64,000 nt of DNA from Chrysemys picta bellii (GCF_011386835.1 NC_088795.1:118606001-118670000); one strand, 5' to 3'. Positions 2,591 to 64,000 are shown, counted from the stretch's first letter. A program made the numbers and translations. The notes: generated from the sequence alone by a model not told the origin.

Positions 2591-3502
2591 TCAAGAAAAA
2601 ATATTTTAGTAATGTTTATCAAATCACTCAGTAGTTAATCTCTTGATAACTCTTTATATTCTTCTTACAGTTATCTTCAATTTAGCTTAGCAATTGTAAT
2701 TCATTTCAATCTTTCATTGTGCAAACGGATTGATTTTCAATACTTGTTGGCTTGACCGAATAGCCATTTTTCTTCTTCAAGTAATATTCCCCTCTCCTCC
2801 TCATACTAGGCTTTGGACTTCAAAGCTTACATTAAGTCCTGAACAAGCCAAGGTGTTGAATGGAGCAGACATTCTTTGGGGAAAGTCCACTCCTCCCGTG
2901 GAACAGCCAGTGCCCATCTTTTAACATGATCCCCCTTTAGTCAGTTATGGTCTCCAAATGGAGTTTCATCTAAGCCCTCATCCTAAAAGATGATCGTTTT
3001 GCTGCAATGTCGTGAGGGAAAGTTGGTTCAAGTGAGGGGGAAATATAAGAATTTGCATCTCTCCATCTATGATACAGACAGCATCCCTCTACAAGCAAAC
3101 AATTATTCATTCTAATTAAACAGTTATTAATTCTAATTAAAAAGAAACCTACATTGTGGATCCCAGTGACTCAAGTTTTGTTTTAAAACAAATGTTTTAA
3201 AAGACAAATTTTATAGAAGTGTACTCCTGATGTTTTTTTTAATACAACTGAAACAGATTTGCCTTCAAACATTCACCTTCATTGTTGCAACATTGTACTA
3301 ATGGATGAGACAGCCAGACTGTGAAACTGCAGTATGATGGCTTAGTTCTGTTTCTGTGTAAGCTAAGGCTTCTTCTGGCCTCAGTGGGAGCTGGATCAGA
3401 CCTCAAGTCTGTTTCCACTGTGAAAACGGTGTGAAGAGCAAAAAAGTAAACAAAGGGCATAAATGAGTTGGTAAGACAACTCCCACCTGTTCATGCTCTC
3501 TG

Positions 3503-3636
3503 TATGTGTGTATATATATCTCCTCAGTATATGTTCCACTCTATATGCATTCGAAGAAGTGGGCTGTAGCCCACGAAAGCTTATGCTCTAATAAATGTTA
3601 GTCTCTAAGGTGCCACAAGTCCTCCTGTTATTTTTA
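3503..3636 (+). mobile_element. Penelope-like element terminal-repeat fragment
   Basis: gaagaagtgggctgtagcccacgaaagcttatgctctaataaat...gttagtctctaaggtgccacaag, shared with the copies at 43256 and 63479. Confidence 0.8.
3547..3586 (+). ncRNA. Hammerhead-like motif with mutated core
   Basis: GCAU-UCGAAGA-A-GUGGGCU/AGCCCAC stem-GAA-AGCU-U-AUGC; the core reads UCGAAGA instead of CUGANGA. Confidence 0.45.
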
Positions 3637-3688
3637 AAGGGCATAAATGGTGTATGTATATAAAGTTAGATTTTTAAATCTAATCTTA

Positions 3689-16594: not shown

Positions 16595-17995
16595 CATATA
16601 AGAACATAGGAATGGACATACTGGGTCAGACCAATGGTCCATCTACCCCAATAGCCTCTCTTGTTACAGTAGCCAGTGAAAACTACTACAGAAGAAATGA
16701 ACATAACAGGGCAATTATCGAGTAATCCATCCACTGTGTTCCAGTCCTAGCTTCTGGCAGTCAGAGGTTTAGGAAGACCCAGAGCATGGGGCTGTATCCC
16801 TTGCCATCTTGGCTAATAGCCATTGATGGACCTATCCTCCATAAACTTATCTACTTCTTTTTAACCCCAGTTATACTTTTGGCTTTCACAACATCCCATG
16901 GCAATGAGTTCCACAAGTTGGCAGGAATTGTGTGAATGTCTTATGTTTGTTTTTAAACCTGCTGCCTATTAATTTCATTGGGTGACCCCTGATTCTTGTG
17001 GTATGTGAAGGGATATATAACAATTCCCTATTCATTCTCTCCACCATTCCTGATTTTATAGCCCTCCTATATCGCCCCTTAATCATCCCTTTTCTAAACT
17101 GAAGAGACCATGTTGTCTTAATCTCTCTCCTCATTTGGAAGCTGTTCCATATCCCTAATGATTTTCATTGCCTTCTCTGTACCTTTTCCAATTCTACTAT
17201 ATCTTTTCTGAGGTGAGGTGACCAAAACTACATGCAGTACTCAAGGTATGGGTATACTATGGATTTATATAGTGGCATAAGGGTATTATCTGTCTTATTA
17301 TCTAACCTTTCCTAATGGTTCCTAACATTGTTAGCTTTTTTGACTGCCAGTGCACGCTGAGCAGATGTTTTCAGAGAACTATCCACAATGACTCCAAGAT
17401 CTTTTTCTTGAGTGGTAACAGCTAATTTAGACACCTCAGACTGTATGTATAGTTGGGATTATTTTTTTGCAATATTCATTACTTTCCATTTATCAGTACT
17501 GAATTTCATCTGCCATTTTGTCACCCAGTCTAGTGAGATCCCTTTGTAACTTTACTATCCTGAGTAATTTAAGTATTTGCTAATTTTGCCACCTCACTGT
17601 TCTCCCATTTATCCAGATCATTTATGTTGACCAATACAGATCCTTGAGGAACCCTGCAGTTTACCTTTCTCCATAGTGGAAAACTGACCATTTATTCCTG
17701 CCCTATTCCTATCTTTTAACAAGTTAATAATCCATGAAAAGACATTCCCTCATATCCCATGACTGCTTACTTTGCTTAAGAGCCTTTGGTACAGGACCGT
17801 GTCAAAGGCTTTCTGAAAGTCCAAGTAGACTGTATCAGCTGGATCACCCTTGTGTACATTCTTGTTGACCCCCTCAAAGAATTCTAATAGATTGGTAAGG
17901 CATGATTGCCAGTTACAAAAACTGTGTTAACTCTTCCCAACATATCCTGTTCATCTATGTCTAATAGTTCTGTTCTTTACTGTAGCTTTCAACCA
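16595..17995 (-). mobile_element. CR1 LINE 3' portion
   Basis: Plus strand opens with the reverse-complement CR1 3' end aagaacataggaatggacatactgggtcagacc; RT-region remnants follow. Confidence 0.9.
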
Positions 17996-36654: not shown

Positions 36655-37430
36655 CCCATAGTCTGCCTAGCTCTTGTGACCTTTTCTTTGAGAAGCTCTC
36701 AGCCCTCCATTGTTTGCAGCAGGCCTTTGATGTTTGGCAAAGGGAACTCCCTCAGGAAACAAAAGTTCCTTTTCATGTCCCATTAAATTCCATTCAGCTT
36801 TTGCTGACTGAGAAAGTGTTTAAATAAAATTCCCATTTCCTTCTCTTGCTTACATTCTTCAGGAAAATTGTCTATCTGCCATAATAACTGAACATATAAA
36901 CATTCTAAACTGTACTGATGCTGTCCTTAAAGCAACAGCAGCAGACGCTGTACTAGTAATAGTTGGAAGCTGTCACAGCAGCTGGTAGCGGTGGAAGAGG
37001 AAGAACATAAGAAAAGCCATACTGGGTCTGATCAGTGGTCTGTCTAGTCCAGTATCCTCTCTCCAGCAGTGGCCAAAACCAGAGGTTCAGAGGGAACAAA
37101 CAGAACAGGGCAATTTATCGAGTGATCCATCCCTGTCTTTCCCTCCTGTCTTCTGGCAGGCAGAGGTTTAGGTTGCCCCGAGCATGGGGTTGCATCCCTG
37201 ATGCTCTTGACTAATAGCCATTGGTGGATCTATCCTACATGAACATCTTTTTTGGACTCCGTTCTATTTTTGGCCATCACAACATCTCAAGGTAATGTGT
37301 TCCACAGGTTAATTGTGGATTGTGTGAGAAAGTACTTGGTCTTATTTGTATTTCATCGAGTGACTGCTGGTTTTTGTAAAAAGCAACAGAGGGTCCTGTG
37401 GCACCTTTGAGACTAACAGAAGTACTGGGA

Positions 37431-37471
37431 GCATAAGCTTTCGTGGGTCAGAACCTCACTTCTTCAGATGC
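37431..37471 (-). ncRNA. Minimal hammerhead-ribozyme-like motif (tandem copy)
   Basis: Minus strand GCAU-CUGAAGA-A-GUGAGGU(UCUG)ACCCAC-GAA-AGCU-U-AUGC. Confidence 0.65.
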
Positions 37472-37482
37472 AAGTACTGGGA

Positions 37483-37523
37483 GCATAAGCTTTCGTGGGT
37501 CAGAACCTCACTTCTTCAGATGC
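37483..37523 (-). ncRNA. Minimal hammerhead-ribozyme-like motif (tandem copy)
   Basis: Identical to 37431-37471, offset by 52 bp. Confidence 0.65.
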
Positions 37524-37532
37524 AAGTGACTT

Positions 37533-37573
37533 GCATCTGAAGAAGTGAGGTTCTGACCCACGAAAGCTTATGC
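37533..37573 (+). ncRNA. Minimal hammerhead-ribozyme-like motif (sense to WFS1)
   Basis: Stem I GCAU/AUGC; core CUGAAGA 37537-37543; stem II 37545-37561; GAA 37562-37564; palindromic AGCU; predicted cut after 37569. Confidence 0.65.
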
Positions 37574-38886
37574 TCCCAGTACTTCTGTTAGTCTCAAAGG
37601 TGCCACAGGATCCTCTGTTGCTTTTTACAGATTCAGACTAACACAGCTACCCCTCTGATGCTGGTTTTTGTATTGAGTCAAAGGGCAAAAAACACTTTTC
37701 TATTCACTTTTTCCACACCATTCATGACTTTACAGACCTCTATCATATCCACCTTAGTAATCTATTTTCTAAGCTGACCAGCTCTAATCCTTTTAGTCTC
37801 TCCTTGTTTGGAGCCATTCCATACCTTTGATAATCTTGGTTGCCCTTCTCTGAACCTTTTCCAGTTCCACTATATCCTTTTTGACAAGGGTTGACCAGAA
37901 CTGGACACAGTATTCCAGGTGTGGGCACACCATGGATTTATATAGTGACATGATGCTATTTTTTTTCTTATTTTCTTTCCCTTTCCTAATAGCTCTTAAC
38001 ATCCTGTTTGCCTTTTTTGATCGCTGCTGCACAGTGAGCTGAAATTTTCAGAGAACTAGCCATGATGACTCCAAGATTTCTTTCTGATGTGAGTTAACAG
38101 GAACACATTATGACTTAATGCTTCCTGTACAACTCTTATTTGACCCCCTTGCTTATGAGTTTTATCAGGGCAAGTGCCAGATTTGTGGCAAGCATCTTTG
38201 TACATGATGCAAAAACACTCATATTTACAATTTTTCTAGCTATGTATTAAATAGACTGGAAGCTAGTTACTATTGGCCAAGTATGAACTTAACTTGCATA
38301 TTTACACATATAGATGCAGTTGATTTCTTGGCTCTCCCTGACTATTAGAGGGTGTTTCTGAAGTATCTGCTGTGATGTTAAAATGTGACTCTAGTACAGA
38401 AATTTTCATATTTTGTCATCTAAAATTTTTCCAAACGCTGATTTCTTCCTTCTTCTACAAGTCCTTGTCACTTTCTCCCCTGAGCCCACATATGATGCTT
38501 GTAGTCGTGATCATGAAAAATGGGTATGCCAAACAGGTTTCCCTCATACACTTAGTGTGGGTGTCACCTAATGCATTAAGATCTTTTGTTCAATAGTATT
38601 TTCCATGCAATTTTAACTTTCACTTGTAAAACCTATAATTTCTTTTAAAGTTACATATACTACAAATGAATATTTTGCCTCCCTTATTGCTTCCTGTTTG
38701 AGAAGCTTCTTTAGTGCACAAGTTGGTGCTCATGTCATCTAATTATTTATTGAAGTTTCCAGTCCAAAAGGACTTCAGGTCCTTGACCTGTGTTTGTGTA
38801 ATACACTGACTTAGTATGTGTGAAAGCATGACTCCCTCTAGCCCCACTGTACATCTGATCATTTTCTCACAGCCAAACAAGAAGTT

Positions 38887-43255: not shown

Positions 43256-43378
43256 ATGAAGTGGGCTCGTAGCCCACGAAAGCTTATGCTCAAATAAATT
43301 TGTTAGTCTCTAAGGTGCCACAAGTACTCCTGTTCTTTTTGCGAATACAGACTAACACGGCTGCTACTCTGAAACCTG
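43256..43378 (+). mobile_element. 5'-truncated Penelope terminal-repeat fragment
   Basis: atgaagtgggctcgtagcccacgaaagcttatgctcaaataaatttgttagtc...ctactctgaaacctg; possible gatta duplication on the flanks. Confidence 0.85.
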
Positions 43379-51438: not shown

Positions 51439-51602
51439 CCCCAGAATAGCCAATAGCCTAGTGGTTAGGGCACTCACCTGGATTATGGGAGACAACCCAG
51501 GTTCAAGTCCCTGATACAAGTTAGGCAAAGCAAGGACTTGAACCTTGATGTCCCACATCCCAGGTGAGTACCCTAACCACTGGGCTATTGGCTGTTCTGG
51601 GG
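51439..51602. repeat. Inverted pair of tRNA-like SINE heads
   Basis: 43-bp arms (51439-51481 / 51560-51602) with 3 mismatches; inverted B boxes ggttcaagtcc (51500-51510) / ggacttgaacc (51534-51544). Confidence 0.75.
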
Positions 51603-51979: not shown

Positions 51980-53204
51980 GTCATGACAAATGTTGAAAGG
52001 TCTGTTTCATCCCAATGAGTAACTAGAAATTTTTTTGGAAACTCTTTCCATCCAGTTCTAGGCTACAGTTCTGGGCTGGCTAGTAAAGGTGCTTTACTTC
52101 CTGTGAATTAGTGGTAATTTTTCCAACTCTTTTTTCCCCTCCCCACCCTAATCTCTCTCACTCGTATGAATATTGAGCGTCTAAATTTTGATGCTTGATA
52201 TTTGAAATCAAATTAGCGAGAATTTTTAAGATGCATCCTCACAGAGCTTTCGCAGTTCTGCCAAGCTTCAACTTTTCCAAGAAAGTAGAAGGCAGTAACT
52301 CATCATTCACAAGATAAATCAGGTCATGTGATTCCTAATAAACACAAAATGAGTTACAATCATGCAAAAATCTGATTACCTTGTTTTTGGCGGGATACGT
52401 GGACAGCATTGTTGTTTTTCTTTTTAGGAATGAAAGCTAAAAATCACTTTGATCTGGTAAACGTGGAAAAGAATGGGGAGGCAAACAGAAATGTGGGACA
52501 GGATACAAAACAATGAGTTGTTTAAAAAGAAAAAGACATTGATACTGGTGTTTCATTTACTCCAAGGATTAAAAAACTGATCTTTCAAATGCACTGAATG
52601 TGTTTTTGAAGAGTAGCTTCTCATTCCTCAGATTCAAAACACTCTGAAAGGCCCTGTTTCTGCCCAAAAAGAACAAATTCCCTAAGGACTCAGGAACTCT
52701 TCTGGATTTTTTTTGTTCTGTTTTTTTCTTATTGGTTTTGAACAGTGACAAGATGATTATTAATACAGACAAGCCATAGTATTGTTAAATACAAATGCAG
52801 ATACTTACCACATAGAATGAAAACTTTTCTAATTGACAATTTTATCCTATATAAGTAGTTGGGATAGTGTTAACAATATGTGTTACTATTTGTAAGGGAT
52901 GCCAAATAAAACTTAAGTTTTCTGAGACACATCTTGGTTAACATAATTTAATTTCATATTATCTTAAAGGATTTTTTAAATAGAAATGTTGCATCTTGAG
53001 TAACATTCCAGTGAAAATTATTAAGGTTTGAATAATTACAGCTATAAATGTAATAACTTGCTAGAACTGCATTGCTGTTCCTATAAAACATCATGCTCTA
53101 CATTTAGATGTGCTCCTTGAATTCTCCAGCCAAATGCACTGAGGACTGAAGAAAATCACTGAGTATTGCTAATAAATCAGTTTTGTTCTTGGGTTGCTTT
53201 GTAG

Positions 53205-53287
53205 AAGCCATGAAAGAAGAACCTGAAGTACTCTTTGAGGATCTGTTTGAAAAGGCCAAAGCTGGAGAACCAAAAGCCCAGACGGAG
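53205..53287 (+). CDS. WFS1: Wolframin coding exon (exon 3)
   Basis: Acceptor ctttgtag|; 83 nt; (E)AMKEEPEVLFEDLFEKAKAGEPKAQTE matches wolframin FEEVLERARAGDPKAQTE; donor GAG|gtaatt. Confidence 0.95.
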
Positions 53288-53616: not shown

Positions 53617-54110
53617 TTATTTATATAGTCACAGCGCCTAAGAGCCGTAGTGCTGAATGAGGTTTGCATTTTGTTCCAATGGTGGTAAATTAAAATCAAA
53701 ACAGTATCCAATAGTCATTATATGGACACTTCCCTCTTATCTCATTGTATTAGACACTGGACAAAAAACGAAATGACACTCCCTGCCCCAAGATGCTTAC
53801 AATCTATAATTAACTTTCACATCTACCCCAAAGGCTGATACTGGACTGGAACCTGGGAAATCTGATATAAATTAAAAATAAAATATTTATCAGCCTTTGG
53901 GGTAGATTTGAAAGTTAATTATAGATTGTAAGCATCTTGGGGCAGGGAGTGTCATTTGTTTTTTGTTCAGTGTCTAATACAATGAGATAAGAGGGAAGTG
54001 TCCATATAGTGACTATTGGATACTGTTTTGATTTTAATTTACCACCATTGGAACAAAATGCAAACCTCATTCAGCACTACGGCTCTTGGGCGCTGTGACT
54101 ATATAAATAA
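53617..54110. repeat. Long inverted duplication, 224/223-bp arms, 47-nt spacer
   Basis: 53617-53840 is the reverse complement of 53888-54110, with about 4 substitutions and one 1-nt indel. Confidence 0.95.
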
Positions 54111-62230: not shown

Positions 62231-63478
62231 AACCATTGCACTGCAGCTGCTAATCTTCATATACATTACCTATTTTTTTTTTTGAAAAAGGAAAATGTGA
62301 AGAAACGATAGGAGGATTTAAAGACTGAAAACGAAGATGGCCAAGGAACATAGTTACAAACAATGCATATTGTACTGAGTGCATTGTAGTAAACCTAAAC
62401 TTCAGTTAAGGCCATATACAGAACCATTCTAATTCCATTTTCATACTAATGTATAAAATGTAAAAATCCATATAAAGTCAGTCTCACTCTTTTTTAGGGC
62501 TGTTTTAAATGTCCTACAGTTTAAAAACTAGTACTATATACTACTAAAACTTCCCAAACTTCAGGTTGAGATTCAATAAGTGTCACTGTAGTCCTCTCCT
62601 TCCAGGTAGCTTGTGACTGATCAGATATATGTGAGACTCAGCACTGAAAGTAACTTTCTCAAGATGAACTGGGGCTTTTTACATTAACTTGTCATATTTA
62701 TGAAAAGTTCTATAGTATGGTGCATGTAAGAGAGAGGAAAGGACAATACTCTGGATAGAGATGGGAGTCAGGCCTGAATTTTATTCCCAGCCTTGACAGA
62801 CTTTTCATATGGACTTGAGCCACATAGAGCTTAGTGTGACCCAATTTCCATTTATTGAAAAAATGTTTAGGGCCAAGACTGCCACATTTCCTTTTTCTCT
62901 CTCTCTCCATTGGAAAGTGTGCTGTGGTCTGAGTTCGTTGGAGAATCTTCTGCTTTGGCATCTATTGGATGATGCTATTGCACATTCCATCCCTTAGCTG
63001 CTGATCTTCTGAATCAGTGCTTCGCCTTCATTCTGATAGCAAATACATGCAAAACAAGCCACTTTGTTCTGAATCCTTCAGCAGCTCATAGTGTTGGGGG
63101 GGGAGGGGAAAGGGGGGTCAGTAATTTTCTGAAGGCTTAAATGGCTGATGAAATAACAGGAGGGTAAATGAACCTGCATGTTAAGTGTAGGCAGAAATTG
63201 ATGTGCACATTTCTTTTTTTACTGCAAATGGGGGAGGCAGGGAATTTGTCATAACCAAACTGAAGAAAAATCTGAATAATAAAGTGGAACCTACAACATA
63301 TGCTTTTAATATCAATTGAAGAGAGACTTGGGTGTCAAGTTACTAATGGCATTTAAAAATGAGAAGTTTTCATCAAACACTTAAAGTAGGAGGTGGGCTG
63401 TTCTCTCCTCTCCAGAGATGGAGTTGGCTGTCCATGCATGAGTAGAAGCAGCTATTACAAGCTAATATTAACTTCCCT

Positions 63479-63660
63479 AAAAAGAAGAACAGGAGTACTT
63501 GTGGCACCTTAGAGACTAACAAATTTATTAGAGCATAAGCTTTCGTGGACTACAGCCCACTTATGCTCTAATAAATTTGTTAGTCTCTAAGGTACCACAA
63601 GTACTCCTGTTCTTCTTTTTGCGGATACAGACTAACACGGCTGCTACTCTGAAACCTGTC
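63479..63660. mobile_element. Fold-back Penelope terminal-repeat insertion
   Basis: 12-bp TSD attaacttccct (63467-63478 / 63661-63672); 61-bp inverted arms (63479-63539 / 63560-63620) with 1 mismatch. Confidence 0.92.
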
Positions 63661-64000
63661 ATTAACTTCCCTGTGCATTTTGTCAGAGGCAAGTTTTCTT
63701 CTGATTTAATGCATTGCCAACACTTGGAAGCTTGATTTAAGCCTGTTTGCAAAGATTTGAGATGGTGTGAACTCAGTAGAAGCATATATAGGCAATTACA
63801 GGTGACATTGTCTGACTGTGGACAATGCCTGAGAATGTAAATGTCATTACATTTGATTTAATATGTCAGCCATGCATTATAAACTAAGAACTCTCCCCAT
63901 CAGTGTATCCCAGAAGTCCTGTCAAAGATTTTTGCTCTGTTCCAACCCTCTCCTCTTTTTGAAAACTTCCAGTGAAGGAGATTGCATGACTTCCCTAGGC

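What the first reader, a model, noticed from the sequence alone, without database searches (positions are those of the whole stretch)
37365..37672. Palindromic Penelope insertion carrying three hammerhead-like motifs, two as an exact tandem pair
Seen: a 14-bp TSD brackets a fold-back insertion with 101-bp arms, 1 mismatch and a 1-nt loop at 37528. The left arm has an exact 52-bp tandem duplication (37421-37472 / 37473-37524). That unit contains one whole 41-nt motif, GCAU-CUGAAGA-A-[stem II]-GAA-AGCU-U-AUGC. So the minus strand has two motifs head-to-tail and the WFS1 sense strand has one. Established: Penelope-like elements carry minimalist type I hammerheads in their flanking repeats; a very short palindromic helix III suggests they work as dimers, and in vitro activity is low. 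Inference: the duplication builds the dimer arrangement in cis on an antisense transcript, resembling a minimal retrozyme-like unit. The sense copy in WFS1 pre-mRNA would be buried in the long hairpin and silent. Caveats: there is an extra A between the core and stem II, stem I is only 4 bp, and N17 is U.
Basis: partly seen in the sequence, partly recalled or inferred. Interest (0 to 1): 0.8.

Follow-up and report, generated by a model that had tools for sequence, protein, structure and literature searches.

The report
Ordinary fold-back Penelope retrotransposon insertion
This is a young, truncated copy of a very abundant Penelope-like retrotransposon, inserted head-to-head in an intron and carrying the minimal hammerhead motif already described for this element class; its 52-bp duplication looks like an insertion or replication by-product, not a working ribozyme device.

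Summary
The sequence observation is correct. There is a 14-bp target-site duplication, inverted arms of 101 nt with one mismatch, an apex at 37528, an exact 52-bp tandem duplication, and three identical 41-nt motifs.

The motif meets every feature of the published minimal hammerhead of Penelope-like elements (PLEs).

The fold-back layout is the textbook PLE insertion structure: an inverted 5'-truncated copy, with the 29-nt "tail" at one end only. It recurs at 63467-63672 in this window.

The element ends 60 and 89 nt after the predicted cut. The 89-nt end falls in the 85-92 nt range derived for the reverse-transcription start in an Anolis PLE.

The retrozyme-like reading is weak:
- On a read-through antisense RNA the long hairpin buries one of the two tandem motifs. 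Freeing all motifs costs about 76 kcal/mol.
- Helix III would be only 4 bp.
- The unit is 52 nt, against 150-450 nt for described retrozymes.
- No transcript evidence was obtained.

Public contigs from three organism labels show the left junction. None spans the duplication, so it remains unverified. The scan had already noted the sister fold-back at 63467-63672 in this same window. Interest is low.

The parts
37365..37378 (.). Left copy of the 14-bp target-site duplication. Its last 4 nt (TGTA) are also readable as element sequence, giving microhomology at the junction.
37379..37527 (-). Inverted, 5'-truncated, tail-less PLE copy. It is sense on the minus strand and contains the extra 52-bp unit.
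37420..37523 (.). Exact 52-bp tandem duplication (37420-37471 and 37472-37523). It is bounded by AAGT at 37420, 37472 and 37524, and the array ends exactly at the palindrome apex.
37431..37471 (-). Min-hammerhead motif copy. The predicted cut lies between 37435 and 37434.
37483..37523 (-). Min-hammerhead motif copy. The predicted cut lies between 37487 and 37486.
37528..37528 (.). Apex of the fold-back, a single unpaired G.
37529..37629 (+). Direct 5'-truncated PLE copy (right arm), sense on the plus strand.
37533..37573 (+). Min-hammerhead motif copy. The predicted cut lies between 37569 and 37570.
37586..37643 (+). Stem-loop closed by a 9-bp stem (37586-37594 with 37635-37643) that encloses the tail-less boundary. 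The stem recurs in the older copies, with one compensatory A-T to T-A change just outside the 9 bp.
37630..37658 (+). 29-nt AC-rich PLE 'tail', present at this end only.
   Evidence: PMC8557442; PMC11167929
37659..37672 (.). Right copy of the 14-bp target-site duplication.

Best explanation
The stretch 37379-37658 is a young, severely 5'-truncated insertion of a very abundant reptile-type Penelope-like element (PLE). It landed in an older interspersed repeat inside an intron, probably of WFS1, which lies on the plus strand.

The element's endonuclease made staggered nicks 14 bp apart, which gave the TSD.

The favoured route to the fold-back is priming of cDNA from both nicked strands (inferred):
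- The top strand primed at the proximal internal start, helped by TGTA/UACA microhomology. This gave the tail-less inverted left arm.
- The bottom strand primed at the distal start. This gave the right arm with its 29-nt tail.
- Both cDNAs stopped at the same template position, 4-5 nt upstream of the hammerhead, and were joined there.
- The left cDNA re-copied 52 nt after slipping between two AAGT/ACUU sites. The same microhomology could instead have produced the duplication later, by replication slippage at the palindrome tip.

The three hammerhead motifs are ordinary passengers of the element's pseudo-LTR/ORF junction. At this locus they are most likely inert. In a host pre-mRNA or in a read-through antisense RNA, the dominant structure is a perfect double-stranded RNA hairpin of about 100 bp.
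For: Motif (shown):
- It has helix I of 4 bp, the CUGANGA core, one extra base, then G10.1...C11.1 closing a 6-bp helix II with one bulge, then GAA, a palindromic AGCU and U17.
- This matches the four emergent features listed in PMC4209133. That paper also reports such motifs in turtles and snakes, and pairs of motifs on opposite strands 100-700 bp apart.

Architecture (shown):
- PLE insertions often carry an adjacent inverted 5'-truncated copy, and a 30-40-bp tail often at one end only (PMC8557442).
- The window holds a second fold-back at 63467-63672 with a 12-bp TSD, a tail-less left arm and a tailed right arm.
- It also holds a solo tail-less copy with a 14-bp TSD at 3452-3649 and a solo tailed copy at 43258-43372.

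Geometry:
- The two ends lie 60 and 89 nt after the predicted cut.
- In the Anolis element, reverse transcription starts 111-118 nt into the ORF and the cut is 26 nt into the ORF, which is 85-92 nt after the cut. There is a second start a tail-length away, and both DNA strands are cleaved and extended in vitro (PMC11167929).

Public contigs:
- Contigs 37172-37398 (X2, X5) and 37256-37396 (X12) have no differences and run from the unique flank 20 nt into the element. They come from three organism labels.
- Word depth over the element is 1e4-1e5 times that of the unique flank.
- Loose ends of other copies pile up at 37373-37375 and at 37659, and the sequence beyond them is AT-rich.
- The hammerhead letters match the family majority, except at two CpG sites.

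Other:
- A paralogous empty site exists.
Against: - No Rfam hammerhead model matches, even at E up to 10. This is expected for a motif without helix III, but it means the call rests on a descriptor and on the literature.
- No PLE reverse transcriptase ORF was found in the window, so the family assignment rests on the 3'-end structure and the motif.
- An exactly symmetric apex is explained more simply by a single cDNA snapping back on itself than by two independent cDNAs.
- The internal part, 37398-37713, is not spanned by any independent contig. The duplication could therefore be an assembly error.
- Inertness is inferred from thermodynamic folding only. PLE hammerheads can be protein-assisted (PMC11167929).
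Confidence: 0.85

Rival explanations
1. One reading: the 52-bp duplication creates a cis hammerhead dimer on an antisense transcript. This would be a minimal, possibly nascent, retrozyme-like unit able to release or circularise a 52-nt RNA.
For: - Two complete motifs lie head-to-tail with cut sites 52 nt apart.
- PLE min-HHRs are thought to act as dimers (PMC4209133).
- A 2026 preprint derives animal retrozymes from PLE pseudo-LTRs and reports family consensus lengths down to 51 bp. This locus passes its operational screen: a TRF array, at least two units with a motif, and a motif MFE of -8.9, which is below -5.
Against: - A read-through antisense RNA buries one of the two motifs (P about 1e-7). 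The competent state costs about 76 kcal/mol.
- The isolated tandem has an MFE of -26.2 in a different fold.
- Helix III would be only 4 bp, roughly -2 kcal/mol by my nearest-neighbour estimate.
- Described retrozymes have canonical hammerheads with loop-loop contacts and units of 150-450 bp, and are multi-copy (PMC7229834).
- There are only two units, at a single locus.
- No RNA evidence was obtained.
Confidence: 0.05
2. Same element, different origin of the fold-back. A single target-primed cDNA from the bottom strand turned around at its 3' end and copied itself (snap-back). It was then joined to the upstream target end through TGTA microhomology. The duplication arose during that synthesis or later.
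For: - The two arms end at the same template nucleotide, leaving a 1-nt apex. Snap-back gives this automatically.
- There is a 4-nt microhomology at the left junction.
Against: - The inverted arm stops exactly at the recurrent tail-less boundary. The second fold-back and a solo copy end there too, and loose ends of other copies pile up there. That fits a defined reverse-transcription start better than a random joining point.
- The second fold-back has an asymmetric junction.
- Extension of both strands has been shown in vitro (PMC11167929).
Confidence: 0.3
3. The exact 52-bp duplication is an assembly or polishing artefact next to a palindrome.
For: - PLE tandem and inverted structures are known to trouble assemblies (PMC8557442).
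- No independent contig spans 37398-37713.
- The two units are 100% identical.
Against: - The duplication is bounded by a clean 4-nt microhomology and ends exactly at the apex. That is the signature of a real slippage or template-jump event.
- The surrounding insertion junction is seen in three organism labels.
Confidence: 0.1
4. The hairpin is a functional small-RNA precursor, of microRNA or hairpin-siRNA type.
For: - The stem is perfect, 56-101 bp long, with an MFE of about -220 kcal/mol.
- Several Rfam miRNA models give sub-threshold hits.
Against: - All hits are well below the gathering scores (best 66.5 against 90) and occur on both strands, which is the behaviour of any long hairpin.
- The sequence is a copy of a very abundant transposon.
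- No small-RNA data were examined.
Confidence: 0.04
5. It is a fold-back DNA transposon or MITE with terminal inverted repeats.
For: Inverted arms flanked by a TSD.
Against: - The arms are homologous to non-palindromic solo copies that have their own TSDs.
- The ends are asymmetric, with the tail on one side only.
- TSD length varies among copies (12, 14 and 14 bp), as in target-primed insertions.
Confidence: 0.02

Closest known systems
Minimal type I hammerhead ribozymes (min-HHR) of Penelope-like elements (Cervera & De la Pena 2014, PMC4209133)
   Same: CUGANGA and GAA boxes; one unpaired base between 9 and 10.1; a G10.1-C11.1 pair; a long helix II; a 4-bp helix I; no helix III, but a palindromic AGCU at 15.1-16.1. 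The motif lies near the 3' terminus of a PLE copy. It is dispersed in huge numbers and sometimes occurs as pairs on opposite strands.
   Different: Helix II carries one bulged A, a feature also described for the Drosophila virilis variant. Position 17 is U. Here two copies lie only 52 nt apart, because of a local duplication rather than a tandem of whole elements.
Canonical PLE insertion architecture: inverted 5'-truncated copy plus a one-sided 30-40-bp tail (Craig et al. 2021, PMC8557442; Frangieh et al. 2024, PMC11167929)
   Same: Head-to-head truncated copies, a TSD of variable length, the tail at one end only, ends at two defined positions about 30 nt apart, an AC-rich 3' end, and AT-rich target sites.
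   Different: The copy is extremely short (130 nt plus an inverted 149 nt) with no ORF. The apex is symmetric to the nucleotide, and there is an extra 52-nt re-copy.
Metazoan non-LTR retrozymes (Cervera & De la Pena 2020, PMC7229834; Li et al. 2026 preprint)
   Same: Head-to-tail units, each with a type I hammerhead. A likely PLE origin, and a TSD longer than 4 bp.
   Different: The unit is 52 nt against 150-450 nt. The hammerhead is minimal rather than canonical and lacks loop-loop contacts. There are only two units at one locus, embedded in a long hairpin. No circular RNA was shown.

Membership tests
PLE min-HHR (Cervera & De la Pena 2014) | Conserved boxes CUGANGA and GAA, with U16.1 and H17 | tested here: met
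   CUGAAGA, GAA, and AGCU followed by U17
PLE min-HHR (Cervera & De la Pena 2014) | [quoted passage not shown] | tested here: met
   an extra A, then G...C closing helix II
PLE min-HHR (Cervera & De la Pena 2014) | Helix II longer than canonical (6-8 bp), helix I 4-5 bp, no helix III, palindromic 15.2-16.2 | tested here: met
   helix II of 6 bp with one bulge, helix I of 4 bp, AGCU palindrome
PLE min-HHR (Cervera & De la Pena 2014) | Self-cleavage, as a dimer or assisted by protein | not testable with these tools
   Needs an in vitro assay. Published activity of such motifs is low or protein-assisted.
Rfam Hammerhead type I (RF00163) and other Rfam hammerhead families | Score at or near the family gathering threshold | tested here: not met
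   no hammerhead hit even at E up to 10, for the whole region or for the isolated motif
Penelope-like element insertion | TSD of variable length, 5' truncation, an adjacent inverted truncated copy, and a one-sided 30-40-bp tail | tested here: met
   compared with PMC8557442
Penelope-like element insertion | Derivation from an element encoding a PLE-type RT and a GIY-YIG endonuclease | not tested
   Ten of the 33 window ORFs of at least 110 aa were scanned against Pfam with no hit. The parent element was not sought elsewhere.
Metazoan non-LTR retrozyme (Cervera & De la Pena 2020) | Tandem units of about 150-450 bp carrying canonical type I hammerheads with loop 1-loop 2 contacts | tested here: not met
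   52-bp unit; minimal motif with an open 4-bp helix I and no loop 1
Metazoan non-LTR retrozyme (Cervera & De la Pena 2020) | Expression as linear and circular RNA | tested here: inconclusive
   only contigs were available, no run is on record as RNA, and neither strand nor ends could be seen
'Active non-LTR retrozyme', operational screen of Li et al. 2026 (preprint) | A TRF-detected array with at least two consecutive units, each holding a canonical or minimal type I motif with MFE below -5 kcal/mol | tested here: met
   (motif MFE -8.9). This is a screen, not proof of activity.

The most novel reading that the evidence does not exclude
The locus captures the birth of a retrozyme-like unit. 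A template jump or slippage at the 5' end of a PLE RNA placed two minimal hammerheads 52 nt apart. A transcript starting inside the element, or two hairpin-tip monomers pairing through AGCU, could then self-cleave with help from PLE protein and yield a 52-nt RNA. This would be a direct intermediate for the proposed PLE-to-retrozyme transition.
Probability: 0.04. Interest if true: 0.55.

Novelty: already known. Interest (0 to 1): 0.15.

Why it matters
It matters little as a discovery. Minimal hammerheads in PLEs, fold-back PLE insertions and one-sided tails are all published.

It has modest value as a clean, young genomic example. One arm ends at the tail-less position and the other at the tailed position, 60 and 89 nt after the ribozyme cut. 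This agrees with the in vitro findings that a PLE enzyme extends both DNA strands and starts reverse transcription at two internal sites.

For the host gene, the practical consequence is a perfect double-stranded RNA hairpin of about 100 bp in an intron. Such a hairpin could attract RNA editing or processing, but that was not tested.

Tried and rejected
- Rfam scans of the region, the isolated motif and the whole window gave no hammerhead hit. They gave only sub-threshold miRNA-model hits, typical of any long hairpin, and one tRNA-like hit elsewhere.
- A scan of metagenome contigs with a degenerate motif pattern, meant to collect family members for covariation, found nothing.
- Read laying on four runs gave only short k-mer contigs. 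They break inside the repeat, so they could not confirm the duplication, the right junction, an empty orthologous site in organism D, or any RNA property. The many 'joints' it lists come from other copies of the family and have short sides, so I did not build on them. I note only that several begin at 37530-37533.
- Pfam scans of ten window ORFs and of the putative WFS1 exon gave nothing usable. The WFS1 assignment and strand therefore rest on my memory of the human protein around the peptide ending KAQTEV at about 53200-53285.
- The bacterial promoter/terminator scan is irrelevant to a vertebrate locus and was disregarded.
- Lunse et al. 2017 could not be read.
- A cis double hammerhead cannot be scored with nested-structure folding because it is a pseudoknot. 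I used constrained folding and a hand estimate instead.

Full report
**1. Observation**

- The 14-bp direct repeat TGCTGGTTTTTGTA lies at 37365-37378 and 37659-37672.
- Inverted arms 37375-37475 and 37529-37629 are 101 nt long with one mismatch (37393 G against 37611 T).
- Inner perfect arms of 56 nt meet at a single base, 37528.
- The exact 52-bp tandem pair is 37420-37471 / 37472-37523. TRF gives 2.1 copies, 100% matches, score 216.

The 41-nt motif occurs three times, twice on the minus strand and once on the plus strand, with none expected by chance. A min-HHR descriptor I wrote requires:
- a 4-bp helix I;
- the CUGANGA box and an optional extra base;
- a G...C-closed helix II of at least 4 bp;
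- GAAA, a self-complementary 15.2/16.2, U16.1 and H17.

It finds exactly these three sites in 64 kb and none in 200 simulated windows.

The stretch between the repeats really is an insertion. The flanks belong to an older repeat, and its paralogue at 16600-17421 aligns colinearly across the reconstructed empty site.

**2. The motif**

The motif parses as follows:
- helix I of 4 bp (GCAU/AUGC);
- core CUGAAGA;
- one extra A;
- helix II closed by G10.1-C11.1, 6 bp with one bulged A and a 4-nt loop;
- GAA;
- AGCU at 15.1-16.1;
- U17, with the cut at 37569/37570 on the plus strand.

Cervera and De la Pena (PMC4209133) defined the minimal hammerhead of PLEs by these same traits. The traits are a helix I of 4-5 bp, a long helix II, a conserved unpaired base between 9 and 10.1, G10.1-C11.1, no helix III and a palindromic 15.2-16.2. 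They also report:
- such motifs in turtles and snakes;
- motif pairs on opposite strands 100-700 bp apart;
- a bulged helix II in the Drosophila virilis variant.

Rfam's hammerhead models give no hit, even at E up to 10. That fits a motif lacking helix III, but it means membership rests on the descriptor and the literature.

In public contigs of three organism labels, the letters of the motif are the family majority. The exceptions are two CpG positions, 37442 and 37561.

**3. The architecture**

The window holds other, older copies of related families.

| Copy | Type | TSD | 3' end(s) |
|---|---|---|---|
| 3466-3635 | solo | 14 bp (3452 / 3636) | ends at the T-run, no tail |
| 43258-43372 | solo | not found | continues through an AC-rich tail of about 38 nt |
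| 63467-63672 | fold-back | 12 bp | left (inverted) arm ends at the T-run; right arm has the tail |

The finding has the same layout as the third copy. The left arm ends at the T-run, with 3-4 nt of TGTA microhomology to the target. The right arm carries a 29-nt tail at 37630-37658.

This is the published PLE insertion structure. It consists of high 5' truncation, often an adjacent inverted 5'-truncated copy, and a 30-40-bp tail often present at one end only (PMC8557442).

Frangieh et al. (PMC11167929) showed for an Anolis PLE that:
- the protein cleaves and extends both DNA strands;
- reverse transcription starts at two internal sites separated by the tail;
- the start lies in an AC-rich stem-loop 111-118 nt into the ORF, with the ribozyme cut 26 nt into the ORF, which is 85-92 nt after the cut.

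Here the two ends lie 60 and 89 nt after the predicted cut.

A 9-bp stem (37586-37594 with 37635-37643) encloses the tail-less boundary. It recurs in the older copies, with one compensatory A-T to T-A change just outside it.

In the contig data, loose ends of other family copies pile up at 37373-37375 and at 37659, and the sequence beyond them is AT-rich. That matches the endonuclease's reported AT preference.

**4. Most likely origin (inferred)**

- Staggered nicks 14 bp apart left two 3' overhangs.
- Each overhang primed cDNA on PLE RNA, one at the proximal start and one at the distal start.
- This gives two outward-facing 3' ends and a head-to-head centre.

Both arms, and the repeated unit, end at the same template nucleotide, 4-5 nt upstream of helix I. 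That suggests a hard stop such as an RNA 5' end. A single cDNA snapping back on itself explains the symmetric apex more simply, so it stays a live alternative. It does not explain why the inverted arm ends at the recurrent tail-less site.

The 52-bp array is bounded by AAGT at 37420, 37472 and 37524, and it ends exactly at the apex. That points to a microhomology-guided re-copy during insertion, or to later slippage at the palindrome tip. Either way it looks like a by-product.

The single arm mismatch is a change in the right arm, because the family majority at 37611 is C, the left-arm state. With 1 difference in 101 and identical tandem units, the insertion is young.

**5. Does the tandem pair work as a cis dimer?**

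Folding results:

| Transcript | MFE (kcal/mol) | State of the hammerhead motifs |
|---|---|---|
| Minus strand, whole element | -218.4 | one tandem motif free at the hairpin tip (P about 0.99); the other buried in the stem (P about 1e-7) |

- Forcing all motifs into a competent local fold costs 74-76 kcal/mol.
- The complementary arm is transcribed first on the minus strand. It should therefore capture the first hammerhead copy as that copy emerges (inference).
- Even the isolated 116-nt tandem prefers a different fold, with an MFE of -26.2.
- The shared helix III would be a 4-bp AGCU duplex, worth about -2 kcal/mol by my nearest-neighbour estimate.

A cis dimer would therefore need a transcript that starts inside the element, and nothing suggests one.

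**6. Retrozyme membership**

- Described metazoan retrozymes have canonical type I hammerheads with loop-loop contacts, in tandem units of 150-450 bp, and are expressed as circular RNAs (PMC7229834). A 52-nt unit with a minimal motif fails the first two criteria, and the third could not be tested.
- The locus does pass the operational screen of Li et al. 2026. That screen asks for a TRF array and at least two units with a motif whose MFE is below -5. The authors report consensus lengths down to 51 bp.
- Passing the screen shows that it would flag incidental duplications like this one. It does not show activity.

**7. Independent data**

Two searches for sequencing runs found holders under three organism labels (A, B, C) and partial holders under two more. 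All are stored as k-mer contigs.

What they show:
- Contigs 37172-37398 (X2, X5) and 37256-37396 (X12) have no differences. They run from the unique flank through the TSD and 20 nt into the element, so the insertion is present in all three. This is short of the tool's 31-nt bridging rule.
- Summed word depth over the element is 1e4-1e5 times that of the unique flank, so the family is very abundant.

What they do not show:
- No contig spans 37398-37713, so the duplication and the right junction are unverified.
- No empty orthologous site was seen in organism D.
- No run is on record as RNA.

**8. Context**

A plus-strand reading frame at about 53200-53285 ends in KAQTEV. It resembles WFS1 exon 3 as I remember the human protein. 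Pfam gave no support, so the gene and strand assignment is plausible but untested. An earlier scan note gave the lead.

**9. Verdict**

The identity as a PLE insertion with hammerhead motifs is confirmed and already known in kind. The retrozyme-like function is not supported. Interest is low.

Noticed in passing
window 63467-63672: A second, older fold-back PLE insertion. It has a 12-bp TSD (ATTAACTTCCCT), 66-nt arms at 95% complementarity, a tail-less left arm and a tailed right arm. The junction is asymmetric. The right arm begins about 2 nt upstream of the predicted hammerhead cut site, which could mean a cleaved RNA template or could be chance.
   Followed up: partly
window 3452-3649: A solo 5'-truncated tail-less PLE copy flanked by a 14-bp TSD (AAAGGGCATAAATG). 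Its hammerhead core reads UCGAAGA instead of CUGANGA, so it is probably inactive.
   Followed up: partly
window 43258-43372: A solo tailed PLE 3' fragment with a decayed core (AUUAUGA). No convincing TSD was found.
   Followed up: partly
window 37586-37643, 63578-63637, 43301-43358: A conserved 9-bp stem (UGUUAGUCU with AGACUAACA) encloses the tail-less boundary in all copies. One compensatory A-U to U-A change lies beyond a C-C mismatch. This is a candidate for the AC-rich stem-loop where PLE reverse transcription starts.
   Followed up: partly
window 37000-37364 and 37673-38100; paralogue at 16600-17421: The PLE landed inside another abundant interspersed repeat. Contig depth there is 1e3-1e4 times that of unique sequence. 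A 73%-identical paralogue in the window serves as an empty-site proxy.
   Followed up: partly
window 53617-54110: A large inverted duplication with arms of 156 nt at 97% and 77 nt at 96%, downstream of the putative WFS1 exon 3. It shows no similarity to the PLE 3' end in my BLAST of the window.
   Followed up: no
window 51531-51587 (minus strand): The only Rfam hit above gathering score in the window is a partial tRNA match (36.8 bits). It lies in a stretch with overlapping ORFs on both strands, so it may be a tRNA-derived SINE.
   Followed up: no
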